From the IMG/VR virus record IMGVR_UViG_3300044957_000763, positions 310,001 to 374,000 of that record: 64,000 nt of DNA; one strand, given 5' to 3'. The notes under the pieces are model-generated. The model was not told the DNA's origin, did no database searches, and saw only the letters and a list, made by a program, of their open reading frames with translations. The first letter of the stretch is position 1, and each line of letters opens with the position of its first letter. Positions 41,132 through 59,572 of this stretch are shown piece after piece. The position numbers and the translations under genes are program-made.

Positions 41132-41175
41132 ATCGACGCGGCCCCGGATTTCAAATCCGGGGCTCAACAAGCATC

Positions 41176-41517
41176 ATGACATTCAAAGTCTTTCAGTTTT
41201 GGAACGGCCAACCGGCCACTATTCGAGAAGTCGAGTTGCCACCTTCCGTGGTCGATGACAACAAGGCCAAGCACATCACTCACGGAAACGAAGGCGTGCG
41301 CATTGGGTTCCTCAATGCCATTTACCACTATGGGCAGAATGAGGTTCAGAACCGAATGTCACCAAGCGTGTCGGTTGGTGACATTATCGAACTCGCGTTG
41401 GATGGAGAATACGAGTTTTGGATTGTGGCCAACGCTGGATTCGAGAACTTCGGCCGCGAGAAGCACTTTCTCTTCCAGCCCCGTTTTCAAAGCAACGCCG
41501 GAGTGGTCGCCGGCTAA
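41176..41517 (+). CDS. YodL-like protein
   Basis: SVSVGDII...GF; motif +37. Confidence 0.6.
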   Translation: MTFKVFQFWNGQPATIREVELPPSVVDDNKAKHITHGNEGVRIGFLNAIYHYGQNEVQNRMSPSVSVGDIIELALDGEYEFWIVANAGFENFGREKHFLFQPRFQSNAGVVAG

Positions 41518-41562
41518 GCTAGACCCGGTCCCGGATGTTGTTCCCCGGGACCACCCCTTTTT

Positions 41563-41760
41563 ATGGAAAATCCGCTCGAAGGTCGAGTACGCAAAGGTAG
41601 TCCGGCATACAACGAGGTTTATGACCCAACCCGAGTACCTACACTCAGAGTGTGCTACAATCGTTATTGTGGCTGGACATGGAACGAAGAACACAAACAA
41701 TGGACATGGACACACCGGGGATGCAATACCCAACTAACACCCAAGAACTCTTCGACTTAG
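41563..41760 (+). CDS. hypothetical protein
   Basis: Motif +37 (first T-variant copy). Confidence 0.55.
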   Translation: MENPLEGRVRKGSPAYNEVYDPTRVPTLRVCYNRYCGWTWNEEHKQWTWTHRGCNTQLTPKNSST

Positions 41761-41939
41761 CAGTGCAAAGCACAAGAGTTAGGCATAGTGAATTCGGAAA
41801 CACCGAAGACCTCGAAAACCTCTACTCATGGGCTCGGGCTTACGCTCTGAGCAATGGTTTGAAACTTCCAACCAAAGAAGACTGCGGACTTTGGGAATAA
41901 CCGGTCCCGGAAACCGAAACAACCAAACAAACAACCAAC

Positions 41940-42197
41940 ATGGCAAACCCATACGGCAAATCTCGAAAAAAAGAAGACCCATACGCCACGTACAAAGATG
42001 GCGATTGGGAGTACCGAATCCTCAAACTCAACCAGGCTCCGGCGAACGCCGCGAAGAACCAGTATGCTACTGCGTTCTGTGCAGTTAGTTCCCCGCATAC
42101 CTACGGCTCGTTCGACATGGGCGACACCTACCTGAATGACATCAGCGGCGTGCTCGTGCAGGGTCCGGATATCCTCAAGGAGTGCGGCCGGCGATAG
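41940..42197 (+). CDS. hypothetical protein
   Basis: Motif +38. Confidence 0.75.
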   Translation: MANPYGKSRKKEDPYATYKDGDWEYRILKLNQAPANAAKNQYATAFCAVSSPHTYGSFDMGDTYLNDISGVLVQGPDILKECGRR

Positions 42198-42288
42198 AGT
42201 ACACTACGTCGGATGACCACGGCCCCGGAGCTACGGCTCCGGGGCTTTCTTACTTTGTGCCACAAAGAGTGGTATAATTCGAGAACGA

Positions 42289-42468
42289 ATGTACGTAATC
42301 GCACAACCCAACAACGAATTCGTCACGGATGGCGCGGGGAAAATCCAGCGCTTCAAGAACCCAAGGTCTGCAAGAGACTTTTTGCGCGATATTGGAATTC
42401 GCAAGCCTGACAAGGAAGGAATCCGAATCATTCCGCAAGCCGAAGCGGTCCCGGAACCAGCGAAGTAA
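42289..42468 (+). CDS. 59-aa hypothetical protein
   Basis: Manual ORF MYVIAQPNNEF...; TGGTATAAT upstream. Confidence 0.55.
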   Translation: MYVIAQPNNEFVTDGAGKIQRFKNPRSARDFLRDIGIRKPDKEGIRIIPQAEAVPEPAK

Positions 42469-42482
42469 TCGAAACAACCATC

Positions 42483-42827
42483 ATGTTCCAAGTAACCGAA
42501 GAACAAGCATTGCAAATTCGGAGTAAATACTCCCACCTACTCGCAAAGAAAAGCGAAGCCTATCAGGCTGGTGCTATTCGCGCCATCGCAGCGGCGCAGT
42601 CCCTGTCAAACTCGGTCAACGAGATGGGATTCGACTACGAGACGTTCGCACAGGTTCTGGCAAGCGACCACCGCACACTGCAACAGAACTCCATGAGGGC
42701 GTTCATCGCGTTTTGCCAAGAACTTGCCAAAAGCTACGAGACTGATTTCTATGACGGTCGCAATGAGGCAAGTTGCAAGCTGGCTGCAGAAATCGTCAAG
42801 TTGCCCGTGTATCTGCCTAGCGTTTAA
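42483..42827 (+). CDS. hypothetical protein (HRTLQQ...DGRNEA type)
   Basis: Motif +37. Confidence 0.8.
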   Translation: MFQVTEEQALQIRSKYSHLLAKKSEAYQAGAIRAIAAAQSLSNSVNEMGFDYETFAQVLASDHRTLQQNSMRAFIAFCQELAKSYETDFYDGRNEASCKLAAEIVKLPVYLPSV

Positions 42828-42869
42828 GGCACCGGTCCCGGAACTTCGGTTCCGGGACTTTTTTCATTT

Positions 42870-43034
42870 ATGCTCACGAACTACACCGTAATGTTCCGTG
42901 AACCAGGGCACTATACTGCATGGGTTCGCATTGACGACACAGATATGTACTCGGCATTGCAAAGTGCCAAAGACCGATTCGGATATGATGACAACAGCAG
43001 GACATCGTTCTCTATTTGGCGCACAAATCCGTAG
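42870..43034 (+). CDS. 54-aa hypothetical protein
   Basis: Manual ORF from motif +37 to a stop 1 nt before the next motif. Confidence 0.65.
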   Translation: MLTNYTVMFREPGHYTAWVRIDDTDMYSALQSAKDRFGYDDNSRTSFSIWRTNP

Positions 43035-43073
43035 CCGGTCCCGGAACCAAAGAAACACAGGAGAACTTGAATC

Positions 43074-43370
43074 ATGGCGACAATCTACGCAATCGCACTT
43101 GGCAGTCGAGACGGCGACACGTCTACCGAACTCAAAATGGCAAACGGTGCAAAAGCCGCACTTGATGTCATGAAGGAACTTGCATCCAGGCATATTGGCT
43201 ATGTGCTGGAAGGCGAAGAGGATGCTCAGCAATTCGTTGATGAAATCAATGCTTCAATATCTATGGACATGGTAATGTCAAAGTTCAATGATGCTATGCA
43301 GGAAGCAATCAATAGCGAACTCGAAAACGCCTACTCTGCCGAACTCGTTCTTGAAGCACTAGAAGTTTAG
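43074..43370 (+). CDS. hypothetical protein
   Basis: Motif +38. Confidence 0.75.
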   Translation: MATIYAIALGSRDGDTSTELKMANGAKAALDVMKELASRHIGYVLEGEEDAQQFVDEINASISMDMVMSKFNDAMQEAINSELENAYSAELVLEALEV

Positions 43371-43414
43371 GCATCGCCGGTCCCGGAACTTCGGTTCCGG
43401 GACAAACAAGCATC

Positions 43415-43828
43415 ATGGGAATCACACCTGAAGAAATTCAAACGTTCGCCAGTGGCATCAACTGGGACAATATTCATGACGGTCTTGTGGCAAGAGCAAA
43501 AAATGGCGACCCTCGGGCAATGCTGGCATTAGCCAAGAATGATGCCGAGGCAAAAGTCGCCATCGAAAAGTGGCTTGGTGCCGACCTCATCCCGGTCAGT
43601 GCAGGCGTAATGATGAGCAATGCGCGACAATCTATGTCGCTTGCTCATATGCACGCATATACCGAGAAGGACTTCCGTACCAGCGAACCGACAGGTAATA
43701 TCCGGGTCTACGGATACCTGAAAGGCTTGAAACGTCGTGGCGAACTCATACCATCATTCGAGCTAACGCTCGACAAGGAATCAGCAAAGGCACTTGCTGA
43801 AGAGCTACTTGCCCAACTGGGCGAGTAG
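43415..43828 (+). CDS. hypothetical protein
   Basis: Motif +37. Confidence 0.75.
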   Translation: MGITPEEIQTFASGINWDNIHDGLVARAKNGDPRAMLALAKNDAEAKVAIEKWLGADLIPVSAGVMMSNARQSMSLAHMHAYTEKDFRTSEPTGNIRVYGYLKGLKRRGELIPSFELTLDKESAKALAEELLAQLGE

Positions 43829-43866
43829 CGGTCCCGGAACTACGCAAAACATCGAAACAAACAATC

Positions 43867-44457
43867 ATGGAAGCAACGCTACCTAAAACCATTGCCACTA
43901 CCGTGGCTAATCTCACCAAGAAGCCGTGGACTACGCTTGCACAAGCGGACGCCGCCGCTGACTTCATTCGAGAACTTCGACTTGAGGCTCAATCACTCGG
44001 TGCTCTCACCGATGAGGAACTCAGTTGGAAGCGACAGATTGACGCCAAGCTGGCTGCCGAAGCGAATGCTCGCAAAGACGCGAATGCGGTGGAAGCGGAA
44101 CTCAAGCCGTACTTCCTCACTTTCACCAAAGACGAAACGGAGCGAGTAAACGCCACCCTGCCCGTGAGCAAGCATCGCAAGTTCATCGAGGGCAAAGGCT
44201 GGAAGGTTCAGCTCAAGGATAAGCCTGGTCAAGTCGTGGTCACCAACCAAGGCGAAGCTATCAAGTGGCTTGAAGCCAATGAACCGACAGCGGTCAGAAC
44301 TGTCAAGACAGTCGATATGTCCGAAGTCGGACGCGAGTCGGTTGTCGCCAAGCTGAAGAAACTGGGCGCAAAACTCGCCAAAATCGGCATCATGGTGGTA
44401 GCCACCGTGCCAGATGGAAACTCCAGTCTGAAGATTCAGGACTTGGATATCCAGTAA
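43867..44457 (+). CDS. Mu Gam/Gp157-like coiled-coil DNA end-binding protein
   Basis: Helical N-half, then K......G.V..K...., AIKWLE, VRTVKTVD pattern; motif +38. Confidence 0.5.
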   Translation: MEATLPKTIATTVANLTKKPWTTLAQADAAADFIRELRLEAQSLGALTDEELSWKRQIDAKLAAEANARKDANAVEAELKPYFLTFTKDETERVNATLPVSKHRKFIEGKGWKVQLKDKPGQVVVTNQGEAIKWLEANEPTAVRTVKTVDMSEVGRESVVAKLKKLGAKLAKIGIMVVATVPDGNSSLKIQDLDIQ

Positions 44458-44500
44458 GCTCGCCGGTCCCGGAACTTCGGTTCCGGGACTTTCTTCAATC

Positions 44501-44734
44501 ATGCGACTTGACCAACTAAAACAGTTCGCCACCGTGGACGATAGCCTGCCGGTTGTGCCACAACGACCGCTGATTCGACTGAACGCAAAAACCTATGAGG
44601 AAGCAATCCGACACAACGGTACCGTATGGGCAAAGATTCCGAACGGTCTGATTGACTGGTGGATTGTCAAGGAAGGTGGCAAGGTAAAGCACAGTCCTGA
44701 TACGCTGGTCGAAGATATTCGACGGATGATGTAA
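44501..44734 (+). CDS. hypothetical protein
   Basis: Motif +37. Confidence 0.75.
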   Translation: MRLDQLKQFATVDDSLPVVPQRPLIRLNAKTYEEAIRHNGTVWAKIPNGLIDWWIVKEGGKVKHSPDTLVEDIRRMM

Positions 44735-44780
44735 ACTTCACCCGGTCCCGGAACCGAAGTTCCTAGACAAACAAAACATC

Positions 44781-44990
44781 ATGAGCGAAGCAAGAACGCG
44801 AAGAATCCGAGTCTATGAAATCGAACACGACGGCGACCTACAAAATGCCGTATACGAAATCAGACGCTGCGGCGCATCGCAAATTGAGGTGGTATCCAGC
44901 GACTTCGACTCCGAAGATGCTATAATCAGTTTTGTCGCCACCGATGAGGTGTACGACAAAGTCAAGAACGAGGCAGACATTTGTCTGTAA
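44781..44990 (+). CDS. hypothetical protein
   Basis: Motif +38. Confidence 0.75.
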   Translation: MSEARTRRIRVYEIEHDGDLQNAVYEIRRCGASQIEVVSSDFDSEDAIISFVATDEVYDKVKNEADICL

Positions 44991-44997
44991 ACAAAAC

Positions 44998-45165
44998 ATG
45001 AACATCACGTTTATCGTACTCTGCATCACCTGCCTAGTAGTGGCAGTGTTCATTGCCTTTGGCAATAAGACAGCCGAGATGGCTGCTGTCAACGCCGAAC
45101 TTGCCAAAGTTTGGGTTGGTATCGCTGCCGTTATCTTGGCACTTGGTCACTTCTGGTCGGGCTAA
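44998..45165 (+). CDS. small two-helix membrane protein
   Basis: Two hydrophobic stretches. Confidence 0.6.
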   Translation: MNITFIVLCITCLVVAVFIAFGNKTAEMAAVNAELAKVWVGIAAVILALGHFWSG

Positions 45166-45207
45166 CGCCCGGCCCCGGACACGACCTTACATTCGACTGA
45201 CTACCAC

Positions 45208-45420
45208 ATGAGCAGGTTCAAAGAAGGCGACAAGGCACTCTTCGGTTCGTTGAAGGTGCCTTGTACCGTAAAGTGCGTGAATACCTCCAGTATCGGAATT
45301 GAGGGTCTAACGCATCGAATCACTGTGCAGTTTGATGAAAGTCGGCGCACTTCGACCAAATGGGAATGGGAACTAACGCCGGCCCCGGAATCCAACATCG
45401 AACAGGAGCAAACATCGTGA
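45208..45420 (+). CDS. hypothetical protein
   Basis: Motif +38. Confidence 0.7.
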   Translation: MSRFKEGDKALFGSLKVPCTVKCVNTSSIGIEGLTHRITVQFDESRRTSTKWEWELTPAPESNIEQEQTS

Positions 45421-45692
45421 GCAACAGTACAGAACTCATCAGTCTCGCACAACAGATTGCACGACAAGACCGCGAAACCTGGAGGCGCGAGAACAATGGC
45501 AAGCAGATAGTGCTTCCAGATTTCGTTTATCACGACTTCGAGCAAAAGCGGTATATTCATCTGCTCGAAGAAATCGTCAAGGGCGAGTATGACGAAAGCA
45601 ACTTACTGTTCTTCAAACGATTGAACGACAAACGGTTGTCAGAACTCCGGGCGGCCCCGGAAACCAACACCAAACAGGAGCAAATAGCGTGA
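45417..45692 (+). CDS. hypothetical protein, tandem duplicate of 45689..45967
   Basis: GTG at motif +37; LAQQIARQDRE.WRRE. Confidence 0.75.
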   Translation: MSNSTELISLAQQIARQDRETWRRENNGKQIVLPDFVYHDFEQKRYIHLLEEIVKGEYDESNLLFFKRLNDKRLSELRAAPETNTKQEQIA

Positions 45693-45967
45693 GCAACATT
45701 TCGCAAATCATCAATCTCGCACAACAGATTGCGCGACAAGACCGCGAAATCTGGAGGCGCGAGCATCATGTCAAGGGGGCTGTGTTACCAGATTCAGCCT
45801 ATGACAAATACGAGAACTTGCGATATATTCATCTGCTCGAAGAAACCATCAAGAACGAGCGTATGCTTAGGAATCAGGATACACTAAAAATCCTACTAGG
45901 CTTGAAGCAATTGAACGACAATCGTTTACAGGCCCAAACCACCGGCCCCGGAAACCAACATTTATAG
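45689..45967 (+). CDS. hypothetical protein, tandem duplicate of 45417..45692
   Basis: GTG at motif +37. Confidence 0.75.
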   Translation: MSNISQIINLAQQIARQDREIWRREHHVKGAVLPDSAYDKYENLRYIHLLEETIKNERMLRNQDTLKILLGLKQLNDNRLQAQTTGPGNQHL

Positions 45968-45979
45968 GAATTCAACATC

Positions 45980-46423
45980 GTGAAGAAACACACTTTCACC
46001 AGCAAGACATTCTGTGGCACTCCATGGTCCTCTCCCGAAGAAAAAGCCAAGTTCGCGAACGACTTAGCCGCTCTCGTGCGGTCTGGTTTCAATCGGAATA
46101 GGTTCCACAAGGGACTCTACAATCGACTGAGCACGACGTTTGGCCATATTGCCCACTACAATATCGAGGGCTTTTATGGCGAGTGGTTCGAGACTCCGGC
46201 AAGACAGCTTGCATGGGTGCAGAACGCACTTAGGTATCCGTGCTACGGTGACCCTGGGTTTACTTACTCAGACGCTGAGCGCCAGTTCCAGAATTGGCTG
46301 CAGTCCGACGAAGGCCAAGAGCTTATCGCCGGAATCGAGCAGTTAGCAAGGGACGCCGCGATTGCCTCAGCTCGGGCGCAGAAGGAGTGCGCCGAAGCTA
46401 CGCTGGCATCATACGGTGTGTAA
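45980..46423 (+). CDS. hypothetical protein (FGHIAHYN..GFY type)
   Basis: GTG at motif +37. Confidence 0.8.
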   Translation: MKKHTFTSKTFCGTPWSSPEEKAKFANDLAALVRSGFNRNRFHKGLYNRLSTTFGHIAHYNIEGFYGEWFETPARQLAWVQNALRYPCYGDPGFTYSDAERQFQNWLQSDEGQELIAGIEQLARDAAIASARAQKECAEATLASYGV

Positions 46424-46466
46424 CCCAACCGGTCCCGGAGCTACGGCTCCGGGACTTTTTTCATTC

Positions 46467-46871
46467 ATGCCCAAACGCAGTTACGAAAACATGAAACAGG
46501 GCGGGAACGAAGAACCTATGATGACACAGATACTCAGTCAAACAACACCGTGGCTCGGTACTCAGCAAGCTGAGGACTATGTAGAAGGCAAGGAAGACGT
46601 TACCGACTTCAAAGTTATCACACTATTCGGTGAGACCAAGCTGCGCCGATTTGGAGTGATTGTCGAGATGTACGACAAGAAAGAATATGGCCGAGCTAAT
46701 CGAGCATACCTGAGCCAGTTTACAGAAGCAGAGCGCAAGGTCATGTCCGCATGGTATCTCAAGATTTATGCTTGGTTCATGCGTTCTGGCATACCGAGAG
46801 GTGGTGTGCGAATGTCCATCAAGACTTACCACACGCTTTGCAGGTTCGCGGACTTTTTCGCGACCATTTGA
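46467..46871 (+). CDS. hypothetical protein
   Basis: Motif +37. Confidence 0.7.
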   Translation: MPKRSYENMKQGGNEEPMMTQILSQTTPWLGTQQAEDYVEGKEDVTDFKVITLFGETKLRRFGVIVEMYDKKEYGRANRAYLSQFTEAERKVMSAWYLKIYAWFMRSGIPRGGVRMSIKTYHTLCRFADFFATI

Positions 46872-46913
46872 AATCCCGGTCCCGGAACTGAAGTTTCGGG
46901 ACTTTCATCAATC

Positions 46914-47456
46914 ATGCCATCCACAACCGAACGAACCCGAGAGGAACAAAAGCGTGGTGAAAACACACTACTTGTTGCTCTTTATCGCGCAAATGACCAT
47001 TACTCTTTGATGTATATGGACAGCCGCGAGTTGCGTGTGCAGTGTGAAGGTCAATTCAGGTCTTTCTTAAGTGATGGACCAGTGCTGGTGATGTACGATA
47101 ACGGCCATCTCATTCCTATCTTGTGGTCGGAATCTAAGTACCAAGAATCAGCAGGTAGCGCAATGGATAGACTGATTGCCCAGGCGACCAAAATCCAAAC
47201 GCATTTTACCATGCGCGGTTTTTCGCCCTTTGTAGCTTTCTGCGATGGTGCTGCATTTGGGATAGACCATGCAAGACGTGATATTAAACTCCACTTTCGA
47301 GAAGGGTTTGAGTCTACGTTGCCTTGCGAGTATGGCAATGCCTTTATCAAAGCCACACCTTGGAGCATCGAAGAAATCACAGAAATCCTAATCGAAATCA
47401 TTGACCGGCGGCTCAAAATCGCCGGTCCCGGAAACAAGAAATCAATCGGAAACTAA
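46914..47456 (+). CDS. hypothetical protein, possible PD-(D/E)xK-like fold
   Basis: SDG...WSESKYQ...GSAMDR; motif +37. Confidence 0.65.
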   Translation: MPSTTERTREEQKRGENTLLVALYRANDHYSLMYMDSRELRVQCEGQFRSFLSDGPVLVMYDNGHLIPILWSESKYQESAGSAMDRLIAQATKIQTHFTMRGFSPFVAFCDGAAFGIDHARRDIKLHFREGFESTLPCEYGNAFIKATPWSIEEITEILIEIIDRRLKIAGPGNKKSIGN

Positions 47457-47460
47457 CATC

Positions 47461-48369
47461 ATGTTCAACGCACAAGTCGACCAGAACAAGCCTGACCACT
47501 TCATGGCTCAGTTGCCACTATCGGCACTCGAAGCTAACCTGATTGCAAGTGATGTACAGCGCCAACCCGACTTTCGAAGGGCGAAAGAAATCACCGATGA
47601 GCTGCTCGCTGGTGGAGAAATCCACGGTGTCTTAACCGCCGAGTATCGCCCAGGAACTCTAGAATTCCGAAACGGAAAGCTCAAAATTCTCAAACCCGCA
47701 GAGCTGTTTGACGCGATGACGCGACGCAACGGTGGTGTTGGAGCGGTTCGAATCGACCCGGTAACGCAAGGTAACAAGACTGCGTGGGTACACTTCATCC
47801 CGTATGTTGACCGACGCACATCGGAGTATCGCATCGCTGAATGGAACAAGGCTCGAACTATGGACCCAGGAGTCATCCAGTTCGGTTCGTTAGAGCCAGC
47901 CGACGTATGGGCACGAGACGTGTTTGAGGCTTCTAAGTTTCTTGTGAAAGACGAGAATGTTTGCTTAGAAAGCAGGGGCAAGGGCGATAAGTTCCACTAC
48001 AACGCTATTGCAAACTTGCTCAAGCTGTTCTTGCCATTGTCTCGACAATACGGCTGGAATACAGCGCAAGCAGCGGATGCTGTGGACTATGTCCTGTCAC
48101 GGTTGTTTACCTTGGAGAACTCACTCTTGAAGAAGCCAAACATCATGAGGGCAGTAAGCACTGCTATCGTTTGGTTCATTGAAGAGAACCCAACCAACTG
48201 GAAGAGTCAGCTTCGAGTCTCGATTCCAAAGCTGAAGCTGAATGTCAACAATCCAGCATGGGAAGGTATCCTGTACTTCAATCGCGAAGGCAAGCCGCCT
48301 ACTATGGTCACCGGCGCCGGTAACGTACTATCGGCATCCCGAACTATCCGCCAGCAACTTGGCGGATAG
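47461..48369 (+). CDS. DndB/DGQHR-like (ParB-fold) protein, divergent
   Basis: VQR..D.RRAKEI, LFDAMTR at the DGQHR-equivalent position, W.GIL; motif +38. Confidence 0.5.
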   Translation: MFNAQVDQNKPDHFMAQLPLSALEANLIASDVQRQPDFRRAKEITDELLAGGEIHGVLTAEYRPGTLEFRNGKLKILKPAELFDAMTRRNGGVGAVRIDPVTQGNKTAWVHFIPYVDRRTSEYRIAEWNKARTMDPGVIQFGSLEPADVWARDVFEASKFLVKDENVCLESRGKGDKFHYNAIANLLKLFLPLSRQYGWNTAQAADAVDYVLSRLFTLENSLLKKPNIMRAVSTAIVWFIEENPTNWKSQLRVSIPKLKLNVNNPAWEGILYFNREGKPPTMVTGAGNVLSASRTIRQQLGG

Positions 48370-52835: not shown

Positions 52836-52881
52836 ACAAACCCCGGTCCCGGAACCAAAGTTTCGGGAACTTTTTTCATTC

Positions 52882-53215: not shown

Positions 53216-53401
53216 ATGCCAGTTGAAATCGGACTTGCTGATGCTATCGAAGAGGTGCTGCGCACTGGTGCTGCCGACATCTACTACGATTCCTCGTTCG
53301 ATACCACGGAGGACATCGCAGAAGGCGCAACACACTCCAAAGGTGTCCAAAGACACCAGGAAGCACTGCAACGTCTCAAAGAGGCGTATAACAGCCAATA
53401 A
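53216..53401 (+). CDS. hypothetical protein
   Basis: GGAGG SD; TAATG overlap. Confidence 0.65.
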   Translation: MPVEIGLADAIEEVLRTGAADIYYDSSFDTTEDIAEGATHSKGVQRHQEALQRLKEAYNSQ

Positions 53402-53443
53402 GAGCCGGCCCCGGAAATCCGGGGTTGGCCAATCTATTCAACC

Positions 53444-53698
53444 ATGCCGAAACCAAGAAAGCCAATTCGTGTAAGTCACACACCACCACTCCGACCAGGG
53501 TGGTATGCGTATAGCCACTGTGGTGGCGAGTTTGAAGCAGTCAAGCTGGCACAAGCTGACGTAGACGACGCACAAAGCCGCTATAAGTTATCCGTATTGC
53601 TCGACTTACCTTTTGTCGATGTCTGGAGCACGCGAAAGCTGAAGAAGCGCGAGTATGATTGCAACCGGTCCCAGAATCACTCAACTTGTGCGGCATAA
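53444..53698 (+). CDS. hypothetical protein
   Basis: Motif +38. Confidence 0.65.
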   Translation: MPKPRKPIRVSHTPPLRPGWYAYSHCGGEFEAVKLAQADVDDAQSRYKLSVLLDLPFVDVWSTRKLKKREYDCNRSQNHSTCAA

Positions 53699-53704
53699 CC
53701 CATC

Positions 53705-53875
53705 ATGGTAATCAGCTTCAAGTGCCCACATTGCAAGGAACAAGTGCCACGTGACATCAAGCAAAGAACGCGTGGAACGCGATATGCCATTCTGTTTGAC
53801 TGCCCTCGATGCCGGAGAACAATTCACATCGAGGGAATCGCCCAACAATCGCCGCCTAAGGTTGTAAAACTGTAG
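53705..53875 (+). CDS. 56-aa zinc-ribbon protein
   Basis: Manual ORF with CPHC...CPRC; variant motif CGGTCCCAGA 39 nt upstream. Confidence 0.65.
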   Translation: MVISFKCPHCKEQVPRDIKQRTRGTRYAILFDCPRCRRTIHIEGIAQQSPPKVVKL

Positions 53876-53914
53876 GCGGCCCCGGAAAACAAAAACCCAG
53901 AAAACAAAAACATC

Positions 53915-54265
53915 ATGCGAAAAGCATTAACGCTCATCGAGCTACTTATCGCCACATTCATCGCCGCTATCTTGATTACGGTGATACTTGCCGGAATTCG
54001 TGGTTGCACCACCCAAGGTGTCGCTGCAGAAGACTCTATGCGGGAGTATGTAAGCAGGCTGTATCCTGGCCGCGAGGTCATTGGTGTTGCTTGCACCAAC
54101 ATGGACACTGACGGCGACGGTTACATCAGTTGCACCGCAACCATCGACATCGACAACGGACCGAATGTCGTGGAAAGACAAATCAATGCCCAGTGTGCAA
54201 CAGGACTCTTGTCCTTCAACAGTGGTTGTAAGGCTGCGATTCCTCAAGCATATCCACAACAGTAA
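53915..54265 (+). CDS. prepilin-type N-terminal cleavage/methylation domain protein
   Basis: MRKA|LTLIELLIA (E+5), hydrophobic helix, Cys residues, DTDGDG; motif +38. Confidence 0.7.
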   Translation: MRKALTLIELLIATFIAAILITVILAGIRGCTTQGVAAEDSMREYVSRLYPGREVIGVACTNMDTDGDGYISCTATIDIDNGPNVVERQINAQCATGLLSFNSGCKAAIPQAYPQQ

Positions 54266-54308
54266 CCTACCGGCCCCGGAGTTCCGTGCTCCGGGGCTTT
54301 TCTCATTC

Positions 54309-54503
54309 ATGCCAAGTTGCGAACGCTGCCAAAAGCCAACAAACGTCACAATTATGTCCATGTTCAATACCCAAACCATTTGCATGGACTGCAAGGACTC
54401 GGAGAAGAAACATCCGAAGTACAAAGAGGCACAGCAAGCCGAACTTGAAGCCGTAAAAGCCAATAACTACAACTTCCAAGGAATCGGATTTCCGGGCAAC
54501 TGA
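54309..54503 (+). CDS. small zinc-finger phage protein (C.RC...MSMFNT..IC..C)
   Basis: Motif +38. Confidence 0.75.
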   Translation: MPSCERCQKPTNVTIMSMFNTQTICMDCKDSEKKHPKYKEAQQAELEAVKANNYNFQGIGFPGN

Positions 54504-54544
54504 ACCCGGCCCCGGAAGCCCAAATCAGGGCAACATTACACATC

Positions 54545-54697
54545 ATGAGCAAGAAGCAAAAAGCACAAAAGCCCGCCTACACCCCGGTGCCCTTCACACG
54601 GGCACACTCCAAGCCACATCGACTTGAGGAGAACAGTCGTGCCCGACGAAAGCGCGAAGAACGCGATGCCAAGAACGGCAACTGGAGACAGGATTGA
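54545..54697 (+). CDS. 50-aa basic peptide
   Basis: Manual ORF at motif +38; TTGA overlap with next gene. Confidence 0.6.
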   Translation: MSKKQKAQKPAYTPVPFTRAHSKPHRLEENSRARRKREERDAKNGNWRQD

Positions 54698-55065
54698 TAA
54701 CTGAGTTCAAAGGTGAAAGGGGACAATTCTCAGTATGCCATGATGGTGAAACGCGGAGTCTTCAGGCTATCGTGTATGCATTGGAACCACCGGATGAGTT
54801 CGGAGTCAAACACAAGGAACCAATTGACTGGCGATTAAGTGAGAAAAATCATTCACCGACCGGCCTTGAATGGGGATATGGTGGCTCCGGACCAAGCCAA
54901 CTTGCATGGTGTCTGCTTCGTGAATGTGGACTGACAAAACCCCAGACAGAAGCACTCTATATGCGATTCAAAGCAGATGTAATAGCTAACCTGCCGCGAG
55001 AAGGCTTTACCCTGACAAAGAAACAAGTGATGGACTGGGTCAAGAAAAGCGGCCCCGGAAAGTAA
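54694..55065 (+). CDS. DUF6166-like protein
   Basis: HSPTGLEWGYGGSGPSQLA. Confidence 0.75.
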   Translation: MITEFKGERGQFSVCHDGETRSLQAIVYALEPPDEFGVKHKEPIDWRLSEKNHSPTGLEWGYGGSGPSQLAWCLLRECGLTKPQTEALYMRFKADVIANLPREGFTLTKKQVMDWVKKSGPGK

Positions 55066-55086
55066 ACCGTGGCATACTCATCAAGC

Positions 55087-55362
55087 ATGCCACGATACAC
55101 ACTCGACACACCAAGTCAGCACTTGCTGAACCAGAAGGATAAGGACATCACCTACTACGGTATCCTGCTGGACGGCAGGGTGCAGATTACTGGTGCCCTG
55201 TTTAATAGCAAGGCACAAGTTGTCAAGGCTATCAAAAAGCTCAACAATGCCATCGAGCAAGGCTTGCCCAAGGTAGAGGTCGAAATTCATCGCGGAATGT
55301 ACTTGTGGGACTTGCAAGAGCACAATCAAGGCATACCCGTAAAAGGTGTGGAAGTGTCCTGA
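55087..55362 (+). CDS. hypothetical protein
   Basis: Motif +37. Confidence 0.65.
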   Translation: MPRYTLDTPSQHLLNQKDKDITYYGILLDGRVQITGALFNSKAQVVKAIKKLNNAIEQGLPKVEVEIHRGMYLWDLQEHNQGIPVKGVEVS

Positions 55363-55430
55363 CTGTGGACACTCTGTCACCAAATGAAACAATCGGTCCC
55401 GGAGCTTAGGCTCCGGGACTTTTTTGCTTT

Positions 55431-55730
55431 ATGAGAAACATCCTCACGAGAAAAGTCTTGTTTCCAGTATGGTTGCTGTGCTTACTGGTCATGGCTGATA
55501 CAGCATGGACTATTTGGGTTGTCCATCGCGAACTAGCTATCGAAGCCAATCCACTGATGGCACACCTGGTCAATTACAATGTGCCAGCTTTTGTTGCCAT
55601 CAAAACTAGTGTTGTGCTTGCGTTTGCCGTAATGCTCGAACTCATACCCGACCAACGACGCAAGAACAGATTCGCACATACAGCATTTGGATTGTTTGTT
55701 GTGCTATACTGTATCTGGAGTATTTGTTAA
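55431..55730 (+). CDS. DUF5658-like membrane protein
   Basis: D...T......EANPLM......F...K; motif +37. Confidence 0.7.
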   Translation: MRNILTRKVLFPVWLLCLLVMADTAWTIWVVHRELAIEANPLMAHLVNYNVPAFVAIKTSVVLAFAVMLELIPDQRRKNRFAHTAFGLFVVLYCIWSIC

Positions 55731-55774
55731 AAATTCGGCCCCGGAATCCCAAAACAACACAAACCCAAAAGAGT

Positions 55775-55984
55775 ATGAAGAAAATTCAACGCATCGCCAC
55801 TACCCTTGGTATTCCGGCGAATGAAATCACCAAAGCCGAGCGTAAAGCTATTCAAAAAGCCAACTCGGCCACTGAAGTTTGTCGAATACTTGGGGTCGAA
55901 GTCGCCGGTAATGTACAATATGTGCAAGCCGCTATGAAGCGACCGAAGAAAAAGAAAACGCAGGTGTATGCGTATGCCGCGTAA
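55775..55984 (+). CDS. small basic protein
   Basis: Motif +39. Confidence 0.65.
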   Translation: MKKIQRIATTLGIPANEITKAERKAIQKANSATEVCRILGVEVAGNVQYVQAAMKRPKKKKTQVYAYAA

Positions 55985-56170
55985 AGGAGGACACAAATGA
56001 CACTACAAAGCTCAGGATGTATGTTCATTCTTGGAATGATATTCTGTGGAATTTTCTGGGGTGGACAAGGCGTGTTTTGGTGGGTGATTGCAAGCATCAT
56101 CATAACCATTTTGGAATCCGATAAAATCTAAGCGACCCCGGAACCACCAAGACCACTGAATCAACAAATC

Positions 56171-56545
56171 ATGTGGAAAACACAGCAACAAGCCGACACC
56201 TTCAACCGATGCCTTGATGGCGCAAAGCAGACAGGATTCAACGGTTGTATCACTTATGCCAACAAAGCAGACGCTGACAAGGCTTGCGCCACGCTCGTGC
56301 CGACGATTGATGAGGCGTATGAACTAACAGCCCATCAGGGCAAAGTCTATGCCGAAGTCAACCAAGAGTACATGAGCGAACCACGTTTGCGAGTTACAGG
56401 GTTTCTCGAAGCTATCATCGACACCAACCCGGTGAGTGCCGAGTTTGAAGCCGAGGGCGAGGATGGTGAGCAGTATCAGATACACTTTGAGTCTGGCAAA
56501 TGGGTGCTACTTCAACGCCCTTACAACTTCACAGAGGTAGCCTAA
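56171..56545 (+). CDS. hypothetical protein
   Basis: Variant motif +38. Confidence 0.75.
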   Translation: MWKTQQQADTFNRCLDGAKQTGFNGCITYANKADADKACATLVPTIDEAYELTAHQGKVYAEVNQEYMSEPRLRVTGFLEAIIDTNPVSAEFEAEGEDGEQYQIHFESGKWVLLQRPYNFTEVA

Positions 56546-56586
56546 GATGCGGTCCCGGAACTTCGGTTCCGGGACTTTTTTTATTC

Positions 56587-56751
56587 ATGCCAACAGCAAA
56601 AACACTCAGGGAACTTGGCGAAATCATCACCAAAAACTTTTCGCAGGAAAGCATTCGCGAAGGGTACCAAATCGACCCCGCCGACTTGGAAGAAGTTGGT
56701 CGCCAAGCATTACTCTTTGGCGACATTCAACAAGACGGGACACTCAATTAG
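56587..56751 (+). CDS. hypothetical protein
   Basis: Motif +37. Confidence 0.65.
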   Translation: MPTAKTLRELGEIITKNFSQESIREGYQIDPADLEEVGRQALLFGDIQQDGTLN

Positions 56752-56794
56752 GCGGTCCCGGAACCCGGACTAATTCGGACTCCCAACAAGCATC

Positions 56795-57175
56795 ATGAAG
56801 ACATGGCTAAGTGACGAGGACGCCAAGGCAATCTGCCGACATCGTGCGAAGTCAAACGATTACATTCGACGTCAATTGTCCTCGGGCACCCAAGTACCAC
56901 GAGCAACTTGGATGCAATGGGCACACGAATACGATGCCGTCCGTACAATCCTTCAGACACTTGCTAGAGTCTGTGACGGCGCAAAGTCGCACGATGGATG
57001 CGGGTTTAACAAACACGATTCAAGGAAAGGGAAGCAACTTGCTTATCAATCCGAACTTACGAACGAGGAATTTTGGATTGGAGTCAGAATCGTCCGCAAG
57101 TATCACCAACAAATAAACCCGGCACTAATGGCGTGGATACCCCGGTCCCGGAAGTCCAATAGTCCGGGTTCCTAA
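56795..57175 (+). CDS. hypothetical protein (CDGA...DG.GFNK.D...KYH.Q type)
   Basis: Motif +42. Confidence 0.75.
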   Translation: MKTWLSDEDAKAICRHRAKSNDYIRRQLSSGTQVPRATWMQWAHEYDAVRTILQTLARVCDGAKSHDGCGFNKHDSRKGKQLAYQSELTNEEFWIGVRIVRKYHQQINPALMAWIPRSRKSNSPGS

Positions 57176-57180
57176 CTCAC

Positions 57181-57498
57181 ATGAGTGAAACAGAAAACTC
57201 AGCCGACCGCTTCATCAAGTGGTTGGACTCAATCGCCAATTCAACGCTCGGCAAAATCGGGGTGTCAAAAGGATTCCATATCTGGCACTCAGGTGGTGGT
57301 TGCCATCACTTCCGAAAGGACGCCGAGAACGGGTGCTACGTTCTTGTGTGCCACGAGGGGGAGATTCCTGAAACCGACCCAGGTATTTGGATGGTGGGAA
57401 CCTACGACGCCGAAGGCGAGGAAATCCACGTTCTTGACCTCGAATACACGCTTGAGGAAGCGTTGGACTCGGCAAGCAAGTTGCTTGCCGAAGTCTGA
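57181..57498 (+). CDS. hypothetical protein (HSGGGC)
   Basis: Motif +38. Confidence 0.75.
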   Translation: MSETENSADRFIKWLDSIANSTLGKIGVSKGFHIWHSGGGCHHFRKDAENGCYVLVCHEGEIPETDPGIWMVGTYDAEGEEIHVLDLEYTLEEALDSASKLLAEV

Positions 57499-57560
57499 AA
57501 ACCACCGGTCCCGGAACCCCGAAAAGCGGGGTTCCCTAGCAATGTCCTAAGGAAAGGAAA

Positions 57561-57869
57561 ATGAGTCGACACACAACCAACACCAGCAAGTTCGAAATCG
57601 TACTCGGAGTAGACCGACCGCTCAATCATGTGTTCGCGTCGGTTTTCGACCGAAAAGGCGAAGATGCCAAGGGTTTTGACCCGTTCTCGTGGTTCGCTCC
57701 GACTTCCGCCGGCGTCGAAGATGCTATCAAGGCGGTTGAAGGATTTACCAAGTCAAAGTTGCCCGAAAGCATCAGGGAGGCACTGCTGGCTGACCTGATG
57801 GCTATGCAGGAAGGTCAAAGCATCAACTATTCCAAGACCCACGGTGCTGCCCTGTTCGGGTTCGCATAA
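57561..57869 (+). CDS. hypothetical protein (G.DRPL..F type)
   Basis: AGGAAAGG SD. Confidence 0.75.
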   Translation: MSRHTTNTSKFEIVLGVDRPLNHVFASVFDRKGEDAKGFDPFSWFAPTSAGVEDAIKAVEGFTKSKLPESIREALLADLMAMQEGQSINYSKTHGAALFGFA

Positions 57870-57936
57870 CCCTCCGGTCCCGGAACCCCGATAACGGGGT
57901 TCCTCTACTTCATCACCACGAAAGGTGAAACGAATC

Positions 57937-58224
57937 ATGGAAGATAACAAGACAGGTTTTCAACTATGCCTGGAGCGTGCCGCCGTCAAGGTAGCATGGG
58001 GCATTCTCGTCACTACTATGGCACTCCCCACTGCATGGAAGTGGGCGGTCGCCATCGACCCTGATGGCATCTTGGGCGTCACGATTGCGCTTGGCTTCCT
58101 TGGAAGCGTTGCGCTAACGCCACTGATGCTTGGATGCGGGTTCGCATCCGATGACTTGCGCAAGGCACGACGTATATGGCGTGCTTCACGACCAAGCCGG
58201 TCCCGGAACCACCGAATCGGCTAA
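57937..58224 (+). CDS. small membrane protein
   Basis: Two hydrophobic segments. Confidence 0.65.
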   Translation: MEDNKTGFQLCLERAAVKVAWGILVTTMALPTAWKWAVAIDPDGILGVTIALGFLGSVALTPLMLGCGFASDDLRKARRIWRASRPSRSRNHRIG

Positions 58225-58277
58225 ACCACTTATCATCGCCAAGCAAGAAAGCAAAGCGATAAAGGAGCAACAACACA

Positions 58278-58475
58278 ATGATGAAGGTTCTTAAATTTGA
58301 CGCAAAGACTGGTGTAGCCACCATCGAACTTCAACTCGACATGAAAGGTCGCCCGTCGACCTCTGGCAAGACCACCGTTCACTTCAGCACGAACGGAAAC
58401 CAGCGCGTTGATGAAATCCAGGTGGGCGGTCGCCCGTTGGTCATCGGCATCAACGCCTACACTCCCAAGGGGTAA
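58278..58475 (+). CDS. conserved small protein (PS.SGKT...ST.GN type)
   Basis: AAGGAG SD. Confidence 0.75.
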   Translation: MMKVLKFDAKTGVATIELQLDMKGRPSTSGKTTVHFSTNGNQRVDEIQVGGRPLVIGINAYTPKG

Positions 58476-58549
58476 CACCTATATCGCCGGTCCCGGAACC
58501 CGCCTAGTGCGGGTTCCCCTACAATGTCCCAAGGGACAGGAGCAACACG

Positions 58550-58789
58550 ATGCCAAAGCAAGACACAAGTATCGTCAATGCCGTTGCACAATACACGCAA
58601 CGCCAGACTCGTCAGCAGGTCAAAAGGTTGCTGATTCGTGCCGATAAACTCAACGGCGACCGGCTTGCCCGCATCCCTGGTGCCGGGGATGAGTTACGCA
58701 AGCTCTTGGACAAAGTCGCAACCTTAGACCAAAAGGCTGCCCATGATTTTGCCGTGAGCATCGGGTGGGGCGACCGAATCCCCGCATAA
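58550..58789 (+). CDS. hypothetical protein
   Basis: AGGAG SD in the extended leader. Confidence 0.7.
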   Translation: MPKQDTSIVNAVAQYTQRQTRQQVKRLLIRADKLNGDRLARIPGAGDELRKLLDKVATLDQKAAHDFAVSIGWGDRIPA

Positions 58790-58854
58790 ATCGCCGGTCC
58801 CGGAACCCCGCTAGGCGGGGTTCCCTAGCAATGTCCCAAGGGACAGGAGGCACC

Positions 58855-59070
58855 ATGAAGGTAGTTGATATTAGCCTGACCGCAACGTCGGAAGGCACGC
58901 TTGTCAATCTCCGCAACGCTCTCGGCCAACGCGTTGCGAAAACCCACTTGCCAGGATGCGGGGACTTTAACGTCCTCGGTTGCGATGTCATGGTCAAGAT
59001 GCCGGCAAACCTCGTCCGCTCGCTTCTGAAAGGGAAGGGTGCATACATCACGACCAACAAGACCGCCTAA
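58855..59070 (+). CDS. hypothetical protein
   Basis: GGAGG SD; in-frame upstream ATG at 58831. Confidence 0.7.
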   Translation: MKVVDISLTATSEGTLVNLRNALGQRVAKTHLPGCGDFNVLGCDVMVKMPANLVRSLLKGKGAYITTNKTA

Positions 59071-59137
59071 TCGCCGGTCCCGGAACCCCGCCTAGCGGGG
59101 TTCCCTACCAATGTCCCAAGGGACAGGAGGAACAAGC

Positions 59138-59242
59138 ATGAAACTCGCCATCTCCCTCGTCGTAGTCTACGGACTGGTCTTTCACACGACCATGACCGTT
59201 GTCATCGTTGTCGCGTTAGCGGTAATCAAGGCGATGAAATAA
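59138..59242 (+). CDS. 34-aa hydrophobic peptide
   Basis: GGAGG SD; in-frame upstream ATG at 59111. Confidence 0.55.
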   Translation: MKLAISLVVVYGLVFHTTMTVVIVVALAVIKAMK

Positions 59243-59572
59243 CGCGGCCCCGGAACTCAACCGCGTCCGCCTACCTAAAACATGGCAAGCAAGGTGCAAT
59301 CATGAAGTATTGAACGGAACGAAATTTGGAACCGACAAGCCGGGGGTGGTGCCCCGGCTCCACAAGCCATGCCGGCCCCGGACATCGAAGATGCCGGCGG
59401 TGATTAACTCCCGCCACAAACTCTTTGGTCGCCGCGGCCTGGCTGGCGACCAGCTTTGCGTTTCTCTAAGGATAGGGGGTGGCATCAAGGTTTAGGTACC
59501 ATATCTGAAATAGTAACGTCCGTATACGGGATGTTATTTTTTCTCTGTGAGCCACATAGGGGGGTGGACCTA

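What the first reader, a model, noticed from the sequence alone, without database searches (positions are those of the whole stretch)
41139..59382. Positional switch of motif variant suggests polar growth or local homogenisation
Seen: every copy from 10264 to 41139 has C at position 4. The T variant first appears at 41526 and is then the majority, with C copies in small runs (45170-45943, 53877-55050). Motif density rises and gene size falls from left to right. Inference: neighbouring junctions share ancestry. That is expected if the array grows by local duplication or insertion at the motif, or is homogenised by recombination between adjacent copies, as with repeat polarity in CRISPR or superintegron arrays.
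Basis: partly seen in the sequence, partly recalled or inferred. Interest (0 to 1): 0.68.

Follow-up and report, generated by a model that had tools for sequence, protein, structure and literature searches.

The report
Motif dialect switch in megaphage cassettes
A 10-letter signal in front of about 80 small genes of a giant lake phage changes one letter halfway along the array, most likely because the far half is constantly reshuffled by recombination at that signal; this is a larger, differently built version of the regulatory-cassette shuffling known from T4-like phages.

Summary
CGGYCCCGGA occurs 80 times on the + strand between 10264 and 59382 (0.18 expected). The first 33 copies all have C at position 4, then 30 T against 17 C.

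The array is a 49-kb GC-rich island of about 100 same-strand accessory genes in a 479-kb lake phage, and the motif occurs nowhere else in that genome. It lies just after the previous stop codon and 37-38 nt before an ATG that lacks a Shine-Dalgarno. In about half of the junctions it is also the 5' arm of a terminator-like hairpin.

Relatives from metagenomes keep the island, the 37/38 register and a general motif CGGYCYNRGA. Each lineage has its own variant: T at position 4 here and in one relative, T at position 6 in sister strains, often at the same junctions.

Between strains, 33 of 44 synteny break ends fall in junctions: genes are gained, lost, replaced and moved there. The genome has no integrase.

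The switch therefore marks the border between a stable proximal half and a recombining distal half in which the junctions evolve in concert. End-wise growth as in CRISPR, and integron mechanics, are not supported.

The closest known systems are PeSL cassettes of T4-like phages and SAS/ESAS of cluster K mycobacteriophages. What reads the motif is unknown.

The parts
10264..59382 (+). The whole array: 80 copies of CGGYCCCGGA in a GC-rich island (51% against 43-44% elsewhere) of about 100 same-strand genes
10264..41148 (+). Proximal part: 33 copies, all C at position 4; larger genes; largely collinear with the relative OFQY
41526..41535 (+). First T copy. The orthologous junction does not carry T4 in the strains that cover it (non-T4 form in OFQY, canonical in L064, T at position 6 in L063), so this T is probably a recent gain in this strain
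42446..44752 (+). T block. Most copies are also T at position 4 in relative OFQY, and most of those covered are T at position 6 in strain L062
45170..45952 (+). C run of 4 junctions around a tandem gene pair (45417-45692 and 45689-45967, 53% identical). OFQY lacks 45424-45942, with ends in the junctions
46430..49175 (+). T block specific to this strain (C in OFQY). It includes a segment, 46886-48378, that is replaced in OFQY
49166..49947 (+). Two junctions with a T.G wobble in the hairpin, flanking genes 49204-49937 that OFQY lacks. Read as chimeric junctions left by a crossover inside the hairpin
56550..59084 (+). Right-end T block of 9 copies. The three with both flanks orthologous are T4 in OFQY too; 57875 matches one T4 and one C junction there. 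The 8 of 9 covered in L062 are T6. The block includes a junction subfamily with its own hairpin, a second small palindrome and a Shine-Dalgarno (57506, 58488, 58795, 59075), in front of unrelated genes
59245..59382 (+). Two terminal C copies. The first is followed at +37 by a 7-codon open frame that OFQY also has. The second is followed by about 250 nt without a gene
38654..38693 (+). Typical hairpin junction: motif as 5' arm, tetraloop, 3' arm, T run, then ATG at +37
33738..33777 (+). Typical junction without a hairpin: motif, A-rich G-poor spacer, ATG at +37
38210..38219 (+). Rare copy of the T6 form CGGCCTCGGA, with ATG at +37. This is the form that dominates in sister and outgroup lineages
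10199..10245 (+). Terminator followed by a host-type extended -10 (TGCTATACT) just before the first two motif copies; a possible entry promoter of the island
6232..7089 (+). Divergent sigma-70 family gene 3 kb left of the island. It sits in the same place in all relatives found and is a candidate reader of the motif (inference only)
6874..7318 (-). Two exact antisense motif copies inside the sigma gene and the next gene. A third, looser one is at 5695-5704. Similar antisense matches occur at the same places in three relatives

Best explanation
The motif is the invariant core of an intergenic control cassette that heads most genes of a hyperplastic accessory island in a family of very large freshwater phages.

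Across the family its form is CGGYCYNRGA. It follows the preceding stop codon by a few bases and sits 37-38 nt before an ATG without a Shine-Dalgarno. In about half of the junctions it doubles as the 5' arm of a terminator-like RNA hairpin.

Positions 4 and 6-8 are soft. Which soft position carries a T is a lineage-specific dialect.

The C-to-T switch at 41.5 kb is the border between two parts:
- a conservative proximal part that keeps the canonical CCCC form;
- a distal part where genes are continually gained, lost, replaced and moved by homologous recombination with crossovers in the junctions.

That recombination also copies junction sequence from one junction to another (gene conversion). 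As a result the T4 form has replaced the older T6 form at many junctions in concert and is still spreading.

Shown: the motif statistics, the register, the hairpin covariation, breakpoints at junctions, and lineage dialects at orthologous junctions.

Inferred: that recombination between junctions is the homogenising force; that the motif is an expression signal, most likely the recognition element of a phage-directed promoter giving leaderless or near-leaderless mRNAs; and what reads it.
For: Motif and register:
- 82 copies against 0.18 expected; none elsewhere in 479 kb.
- A start codon at +37 or +38 in 63 of 80 junctions. The same register holds in relatives: 34 of 48 in L062 and 14 of 15 in L063.
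- The stop codon lies 0-8 nt before the motif in most junctions.
- Genes headed by the motif start with ATG in 59 of 64 cases, and only 5 of 64 have a Shine-Dalgarno core. For the others the figure is 13 of 41.

Hairpins:
- 38 of 80 junctions fold at -15 kcal/mol or better with the motif as 5' arm.
- Over five strains, position 4 pairs C-G 77 times, T-A 12, T.G 4 and C.A 0. Position 6 pairs C-G 80, T-A 11, T.G 2 and C.A 0.

Turnover:
- 33 of 44 synteny block ends fall in junction windows that cover 11.7% of the region (P about 3e-22).
- Whole genes are present or absent with ends in junctions, and one gene sits in another slot in the relative.
- 5 of 6 T.G junctions flank strain-specific genes.

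Dialects:
- window: 50 C and 30 T4;
- OFQY: 35 C and 21 T4;
- L062: 18 canonical and 25 T6;
- L064: 16 canonical and 7 T6;
- L063, L055 and L057: T6 forms.

Concerted change:
- Junctions that are T4 in both the window and OFQY are T6 in L062 in 11 of 14 cases. Junctions that are C in both are T6 in 2 of 8 (p = 0.026).
- At some of these the junction body is the same, with only the motif swapped.
- Position 4 differs at 9 of 37 paired junctions between the window and OFQY, while the other nine motif positions never differ.

No tyrosine or serine recombinase is detectable.
Against: - Spacer similarity between neighbouring junctions is barely above background (0.41 against 0.38), so any conversion tracts would have to be short or confined to junction subfamilies.
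- The window, OFQY, L062 and L064 are almost equally distant in protein identity.
- Breakpoints at intergenic junctions are partly what selection for intact genes alone would give.
- No excised circles, deletions or transcripts could be seen. The reads were assembled contigs that break at the hairpins, and no RNA run holds the phage.
- The junctions have no -10 hexamer, so the promoter reading is not shown.
Confidence: 0.5

Rival explanations
1. Two functional classes of the signal. Canonical CCCC junctions and junctions with one T in the pyrimidine run are read differently, for example at different times or strengths, by one factor or by two. The T6-to-T4 change is co-evolution of the sites with a reader whose specificity shifted.
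For: - Blocks of the non-canonical form occupy the same places in lineages that use different dialects: 42.8-44.5 kb and 56.7-59.1 kb (Fisher p = 0.026).
- The change looks fast on a short internal branch.
- Three sigma-70 family genes are present, one of them next to the island in every relative.
- T4 copies are more often followed by AC (13 of 22 against 7 of 41).
Against: - Class is not well conserved. 9 of 37 paired junctions flip between the window and OFQY. Over all window-L062 pairs the association is not significant (p = 0.16).
- At several junctions T4 in this strain (41526, 41902, 46430, 51768) corresponds to the canonical form in most or all of the strains that cover them, which looks like spread rather than a kept class.
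- No other feature (register, hairpin, T run) separates the two forms.
Confidence: 0.22
2. Independent point mutation at a neutral pyrimidine position, for instance deamination of a methylated C in GGCC. There is no copying between junctions, and the clustering reflects regional mutation rate or chance.
For: - Position 4 changes about as fast as unconstrained spacer positions: 75% identity between paired junctions.
- Only C and T occur there.
- Some flips differ from the relative only at the compensating pair, for example 46430.
Against: - Each lineage uses almost only one dialect: 30 T4 and 2 T6 here, 25 T6 and 1 T4-like copy in L062.
- Two specific changes at 11 of 14 junctions cannot plausibly be independent.
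- There are 33 C copies in a row on the left.
Confidence: 0.06
3. Integron-like or CRISPR-like array: a site-specific recombinase inserts units at the motif, with polar addition at one end.
For: - A one-directional array of small genes separated by a conserved, partly palindromic repeat.
- Gene-sized insertions and deletions at the repeats.
Against: - No tyrosine or serine recombinase is detectable in the genome.
- Half of the junctions have no inverted repeat.
- The motif keeps a fixed register with the next start codon, which a recombination site does not need.
- Turnover is spread over 18 kb, not concentrated at one end.
Confidence: 0.05
4. Assembly chimera: a foreign GC-rich segment was wrongly joined into the phage contig.
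For: A sharp GC step, 43% to 51%, at both ends of the island.
Against: - The same flank-to-island junction, with the sigma gene 3 kb upstream, is present in independent ENA, JGI, Logan and NCBI assemblies.
- Contigs from four other lake samples match 42.0-48.0 kb at 99-100%.
Confidence: 0.01

Closest known systems
PeSL (promoter-early stem-loop) cassettes of T4-like phage hyperplastic regions (Arbiol et al. 2010, PMC2839356; Comeau et al. 2014, PMC4122927)
   Same: - Short composite intergenic motifs repeated in a region rich in orphan genes.
- A stem-loop terminator overlaps the upstream part of the signal.
- Insertions, deletions and replacements between related phages have their ends in the motifs.
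- Crossovers lie in or beside the loop.
- No dedicated recombinase is involved.
   Different: - PeSLs carry recognisable sigma-70 -35 and -10 boxes, a Shine-Dalgarno and a variable leader.
- Here the core is a GC-rich 10-mer with no -10 or -35 hexamers and no Shine-Dalgarno, and it keeps a fixed 37-38 nt register to the ATG.
- The scale is far larger: 80 copies in one 49-kb block.
- The host phage is a 479-kb freshwater phage.
- Lineage-specific dialects are seen here.
- Mini-circles were not observable.
Start-associated sequences (SAS) and extended SAS of cluster K mycobacteriophages (Pope et al. 2011, PMC3203893)
   Same: - An asymmetric motif in one orientation.
- It is tied in register to the start codons of many unrelated non-structural genes.
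- There is a strong ATG preference.
- About half of the sites have an added inverted repeat.
- The consensus differs by lineage at single positions.
- The function is unknown, and a phage or host reader has been suspected.
   Different: - SAS lies 3-7 bp before the start codon and contains the Shine-Dalgarno core.
- Here there are 27 nt between motif and ATG, and no Shine-Dalgarno.
- The inverted repeat uses the motif itself as one arm and looks like a terminator.
- Gene turnover at SAS sites was not the reported feature.
Integron and superintegron cassette arrays
   Same: A one-directional array of small, mostly unknown genes separated by a conserved repeat, with gene-sized gain and loss at the repeats.
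   Different: There is no integrase, no attI, and no attC-type long imperfect palindrome. The repeat is locked to the next start codon.
Leaderless expression with a -10 box next to the start codon (Deinococcus-Thermus, PMC12340547; Thermus phage phiYS40 from memory)
   Same: - Genes headed by the motif lack a Shine-Dalgarno and start with ATG.
- The sigma gene at 6232 and two neighbouring genes at 7108 and 8023 have an extended -10 (TGGTAnAnT) close before the ATG: 6-7 nt for 7108 and 8023, about 11 nt for 6232. Leaderless or short-leader expression therefore seems available in this host.
   Different: Island junctions have no -10 box before the ATG. The conserved element lies at -37 to -28, and only a W-rich, G-poor tract and the context (A/T)TC precede the ATG.

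Membership tests
PeSL cassettes | Composite intergenic motif repeated within a hyperplastic region rich in orphan genes | tested here: met
   80 copies in a 49-kb island. Most proteins have no family or only DUFs.
PeSL cassettes | Contains a sigma-70-like early promoter (-35 and -10 boxes) | tested here: not met
   No conserved hexamers in junction logos aligned on the motif or on the ATG. The consensus scan found no excess of promoter-like sites.
PeSL cassettes | Contains a stem-loop that can terminate upstream transcription | tested here: met
   38 of 80 junctions fold strongly and about 20 have a T run. Covariation is strong and no C.A pair occurs. Termination itself was not assayed.
PeSL cassettes | Insertions, deletions and replacements between related phages end in the motifs | tested here: met
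   33 of 44 block ends fall in junction windows; individual cases.
PeSL cassettes | Excised mini-circles formed by exchange between neighbouring motifs | tested here: inconclusive
   Only assembled contigs were available, and they break at the hairpins. One weak joint, 42248 to 46871, has a 29-nt side.
Integron | IntI-type tyrosine recombinase next to the array | tested here: not met
   PF00589 and PF00239 have no match in the 479-kb genome, while the controls rang.
Integron | attC sites: long imperfect inverted repeats at the 3' end of every cassette | tested here: not met
   About half of the junctions have no inverted repeat at all.
CRISPR array | Short non-coding spacers of near-constant length between repeats, with polar addition at a leader | tested here: not met
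   The units are genes of 0.1-3 kb. Strain differences are spread over 18 kb.
SAS/ESAS | Motif 3-7 bp before the start codon, containing the Shine-Dalgarno core | tested here: not met
   The gap between motif and ATG is 27-28 nt, and a Shine-Dalgarno core is present in 5 of 64.
SAS/ESAS | One orientation, ATG preference, restricted to the non-structural part, half of the sites with an added inverted repeat | tested here: met
   80 copies on + against 2 on -; 59 of 64 start with ATG; no structural genes were found among the island proteins scanned; 38 of 80 have a hairpin.
Leaderless promoter with -10 next to the ORF | -10 hexamer 6-7 nt before the start codon | tested here: not met
   Absent at island junctions. 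Present at flank genes 7108 and 8023, and at about 11 nt before 6232.
Regulon of the adjacent sigma factor | The motif is bound, and transcription started, by RNA polymerase carrying the phage sigma | not testable with these tools
   Only co-location in all relatives and a weak SigI/ECF-like family assignment.

The most novel reading that the evidence does not exclude
The motif is the recognition element of a phage-directed expression system not described so far, perhaps read by the sigma factor next door. It would start leaderless or near-leaderless transcripts a fixed 37-38 nt downstream and overlap the previous gene's terminator. The same sites would serve as the recombination scaffold that lets a megaphage keep about 100 plug-and-play accessory genes.
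Probability: 0.25. Interest if true: 0.8.

Novelty: new variant of a known kind. Interest (0 to 1): 0.6.

Why it matters
Very large phages carry many small genes of unknown function, and how these are acquired, expressed and exchanged is poorly understood.

Here one short signal organises about 100 such genes into standard units. These units can be traced across strains, counted as they are gained and lost, and assigned to lineages by dialect.

This gives three things:
- a natural system for studying concerted evolution of regulatory sites;
- a likely new promoter or translation signal to test;
- a simple sequence handle, the motif plus an ATG at +37/38, for finding accessory-gene islands of this phage family in metagenomes.

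Tried and rejected
Searches for relatives and sources:
- IMG/VR has no relative of the island or its flanks: the motif-hairpin pattern gave one chance hit, and three flank proteins gave nothing.
- GTDB genomes gave only single chance hits in high-GC bacteria, so there is no host or donor clue.
- Rfam found only tRNA-Gln.
- A literature search for the motif letters found only primers and unrelated sequences.

Reads:
- Seventeen freshwater studies hold the phage and none is RNA.
- Contigs of four runs laid on 42000-47999 (6,000 letters) are 99-100% identical but break at the hairpins.
- The loose ends are cross-matches of other junctions, so they are no evidence for or against circles or deletions.

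Candidate readers:
- No T7-like RNA polymerase match was found, but that control rang nowhere, so it is not informative.
- No multisubunit polymerase and no NusG/RfaH-like gene were found.
- A SigI-type -10 (CGAA) was looked for in the spacers. CGA is common but has no fixed position, so this was dropped.
- The classical leaderless layout (-10 next to the ATG) is not present at island junctions.
- The first island gene (10340-10819) was considered as a regulator. It has no family and only viral hypothetical look-alikes, and it is conserved only in the closer relatives.

Limits:
- More of record OFQY01000001.1 could not be fetched: the per-record limit was nearly reached and the record is not held by the genome search.
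- No alternative genetic code was used.

Full report
**Observation**

It has 82 matches in the window against 0.18 expected from shuffles. Eighty are on the + strand between 10264 and 59382.

Position 4 reads C in the first 33 copies (10264-41139). T appears first at 41526. The remaining 47 copies are 30 T and 17 C. So long an all-C start is very unlikely by chance (about 4e-11 for a run of 35; somewhat larger for the 33 observed). Inside the right part the order is only weakly clustered (p = 0.09).

Spacing falls from a median of 675 nt to 366 nt.

**What the array is**

- The window is bases 310001-374000 of a 478,840-bp virus record with terminal repeats. All copies of the motif in that genome lie in this window. 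With a looser form, 84 of 87 + strand matches lie in the island.
- The array coincides with a GC island: 51% against 43-44% elsewhere.
- The island holds about 100 genes, nearly all on the + strand, and 91% of it is coding.
- The larger proteins are accessory types: WGR domains, an ATP-dependent ligase, a MoxR-type ATPase with a VWA partner, a GHKL ATPase, a methyltransferase and several DUFs. Most of the small ones match nothing. No virion or replication core genes were seen.
- No other comparably repeated intergenic word was found among the most frequent 9-, 10- and 12-letter words of the genome.

**Anatomy of a junction**

- The motif starts 0-8 nt after the previous stop codon in most cases.
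- An ATG, rarely GTG, stands at +37 in 36 junctions and at +38 in 27, together 63 of 80.
- Genes headed by the motif use ATG in 59 of 64 cases, and only 5 have a Shine-Dalgarno core. Genes inside small operons that lack the motif often have a good one, 13 of 41.
- The last bases before the ATG are (A/T)TC. The tract from -11 to -1 is rich in A or T and almost free of G. No -10 or -35 hexamer is present.
- In 38 of 80 junctions the motif is the 5' arm of a strong hairpin, and about 20 of these are followed by a T run.
- The T form is matched by an A in the 3' arm. Over five strains, position 4 pairs C-G 77 times, T-A 12, T.G 4 and C.A never. Position 6 gives 80, 11, 2 and 0. Tolerating T.G but not C.A is what selection on an RNA helix would give.
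- The other junctions have the motif but no hairpin. The motif therefore has a role of its own, and the hairpin re-uses it.

**Relatives**

A strict motif-hairpin pattern found nothing real in IMG/VR or in GTDB genomes. In metagenome contigs it found one diverged relative, at 75-85% DNA identity. This is OFQY01000001.1, together with its near-identical copy OFRM01000225.1.

Homologs of the sigma gene at 6232-7089, and of the island protein 50348-51040, led to further strains from ENA, JGI, Logan and NCBI assemblies.

All of them keep the same order: radical-SAM gene, sigma gene, a few small genes, a gap, then the island. This also rules out an assembly chimera.

All keep the 37/38 register. 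The motif itself differs by lineage:

| Strain or locus | Forms of the motif |
|---|---|
| Window | 50 CGGCCCCGGA, 30 CGGTCCCGGA |
| OFQY | 35 and 21 of the same two forms |
| L062 | 18 canonical, 25 CGGCCTCGGA |
| L064 | 16 canonical, 7 CGGCCTCGGA |
| L063, L055, L057 | CGGCCT followed by C, T or A, then GGA |
| Deepest relative (L059, L065) | mostly CGGCCCC followed by G or A, then GA |

The family form is thus CGGYCYNRGA, with positions 4 and 6-8 soft.

**Gene turnover at junctions**

When OFQY is aligned to 32.4-59.4 kb of the window, 33 of 44 block ends fall within junction windows that make up 11.7% of the region (P about 3e-22).

- Present here and absent in OFQY: 44501-44734, 45417-45967 and 49204-49937.
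- Extra genes in OFQY: at junctions 40804, 41139, 50311 and 51768.
- Replaced: 46886-48378.
- Moved: gene 57561-57869 sits in another slot in OFQY.

Selection for intact genes would by itself favour intergenic ends. But adjacent blocks overlap by 25-40 nt of junction sequence. Also, 5 of the 6 hairpins with a T.G pair flank strain-specific genes, as expected for chimeric junctions made by a crossover between the motif and the 3' arm.

Turnover starts at about 40.8 kb and is spread through to 58.5 kb. In the stretches of the left part that the relative covers, it is mostly collinear.

Only five paralogous pairs exist among about 105 ORFs, so the array was not built by duplication of units.

**What the C/T switch means**

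Between the window and OFQY, position 4 differs at 9 of 37 paired junctions, while the other nine positions never differ. The position is free to be C or T.

The dialects nevertheless do not mix: there are 30 T4 against 2 T6 here, and 25 T6 against one T4-like copy in L062.

At orthologous junctions, those that are T4 in both the window and OFQY are T6 in L062 in 11 of 14 cases. Those that are C in both are T6 in 2 of 8 (p = 0.026). In several cases the junction body is the same and only the motif is swapped.

Two specific changes at a dozen junctions cannot be independent, so the junctions evolve in concert.

Outgroups carry T6 or the canonical form, which makes T4 derived. At four junctions (41526, 41902, 46430, 51768) this strain's T4 corresponds to the canonical form in most or all of the strains that cover them, so T4 seems still to be spreading. 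The left edge of the T zone is therefore specific to this strain.

I read the switch at 41.5 kb as the border between a stable half and a recombining half. The T form is a dialect that moved through the recombining half by junction-to-junction exchange.

Any copying must therefore involve short tracts or junction subfamilies. One such subfamily is the right-end group 57506, 58488, 58795 and 59075, whose 65-nt junctions are 77-92% alike in front of unrelated genes.

A rival I cannot exclude is that the non-canonical form marks a functional class whose sites co-evolved with a reader. The four closest strains are nearly equidistant, so the change was fast.

**What the motif does**

This part is inference. 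The fixed register kept across lineages whose sigma proteins are only 57% identical, the ATG-only starts and the lack of a Shine-Dalgarno all point to an expression signal.

- Leaderless or short-leader expression seems available in the host. The sigma gene and two neighbouring genes have an extended -10 close before the ATG: 6-7 nt at 7108 and 8023, about 11 nt at 6232 (background).
- The island junctions lack that box and carry the motif at -37 to -28 instead.
- A phage-directed promoter is my first choice. It might use the neighbouring divergent sigma and would overlap the previous gene's terminator.
- An RNA-level signal for translation or processing is second.
- No phage RNA polymerase, NusG-like factor or recombinase was found.

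**Comparison with known systems**

The closest system in behaviour is the PeSL cassette of T4-like phages: a promoter plus stem-loop, often with the stem-loop between -35 and -10. PeSLs mediate insertions, deletions and replacements between related phages, with crossovers in the loop and without a dedicated recombinase. The present junctions meet the repeat, stem-loop and breakpoint features. They fail the sigma-70 promoter and Shine-Dalgarno features.

The closest in register and orientation is the SAS/ESAS system of cluster K mycobacteriophages. It also shows ATG preference, an inverted repeat at half of the sites and lineage-specific consensus positions. It differs in that it sits on the ribosome-binding site.

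Integron and CRISPR membership fail on their defining features.

I file the array as a new variant of a known kind.

**Limits**

- No RNA data exist for this phage.
- The reads available were assembled contigs that break at the hairpins.
- Only parts of the relatives' islands could be fetched.

Noticed in passing
window 5695-5704, 6874-6883, 7309-7318 (- strand): Three antisense copies of the motif (two exact) lie inside the radical-SAM gene, the sigma gene and the next gene. Of only 11 loose matches on the - strand in 479 kb, these three sit within 1.6 kb beside the island. Matches at the same offsets occur in L052, L054 and L061. In the sigma gene they encode a conserved D-S-(G/R)-A stretch, so coding constraint may explain them; antisense control of the sigma operon is the other reading.
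   Followed up: partly
window 6205-6232, 7085-7108, 8000-8023: The sigma gene and two neighbours have an extended -10 (TGGTAnAnT) 6-11 nt before the start codon, the layout of leaderless or short-leader genes. Relatives show the same. This hints at a host in which leaderless mRNAs are common.
   Followed up: partly
L059 and L065 (NCBI JAFDWS010000002.1, 1.36 Mb, labelled Armatimonadetes MAG): A 1.36-Mb contig of a bacterial MAG carries the syntenic sigma region and, about 47 kb away, island genes with the motif. It could be an integrated relative (a host clue), or a mis-binned or chimeric contig.
   Followed up: no
window 10000-59500 against L055, L057, L063: The island is GC-rich relative to its flanks only in the lineages whose motif is C-rich (window, YANG21, JGI contig). 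In L055 and L057 the island has the flank's GC and the motif carries T or A at the soft positions. GC-biased gene conversion in a recombination hot region would produce both.
   Followed up: no
window 70-1586: A tandem array of 78-nt units (12 or more copies, 66-73% alike) inside the open frame 380-1714, which would encode 26-residue repeats.
   Followed up: no
window 9043-9203: A perfect sigma-70 promoter (TTGACA, 17 nt, TATAAT, with TG) stands in front of tRNA-Gln (9134-9203). It is followed by about 1 kb without a convincing gene before the island; relatives also have a gap here.
   Followed up: partly
window 59560-59620 and 60253-60300; also 9600-9640: Similar elements of about 50 nt, with a palindromic TTTTCGAAAAAA core, flank the Cys-rich - strand ORF 59633-60205 at the right edge of the island. 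A related element lies near 9620, and one lies in L061. This may be a small mobile element or a homing-endonuclease unit.
   Followed up: no
window 59245-59305: The next-to-last motif copy is followed at +37 by an open frame of only 7 codons. OFQY has a 7-codon frame at the same place with a different peptide.
   Followed up: no
window 8455-8475 and the same place in L052, L054, L057, L059, L061: A direct repeat, GGAAACA then TGGAAACAC, precedes the conserved 154-residue gene (8512-8976) in most relatives examined. It is a likely operator or other binding site.
   Followed up: no
L052 (ENA scaffold_28, 220 kb) and L062 (scaffold_18, 278 kb) of sample ERZ23499452: The left part of the island ends one scaffold, and the right part lies in the other. 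The two scaffolds add up to about 498 kb, close to this phage's 479 kb. They are probably one genome whose assembly broke in the repeat-rich island.
   Followed up: no
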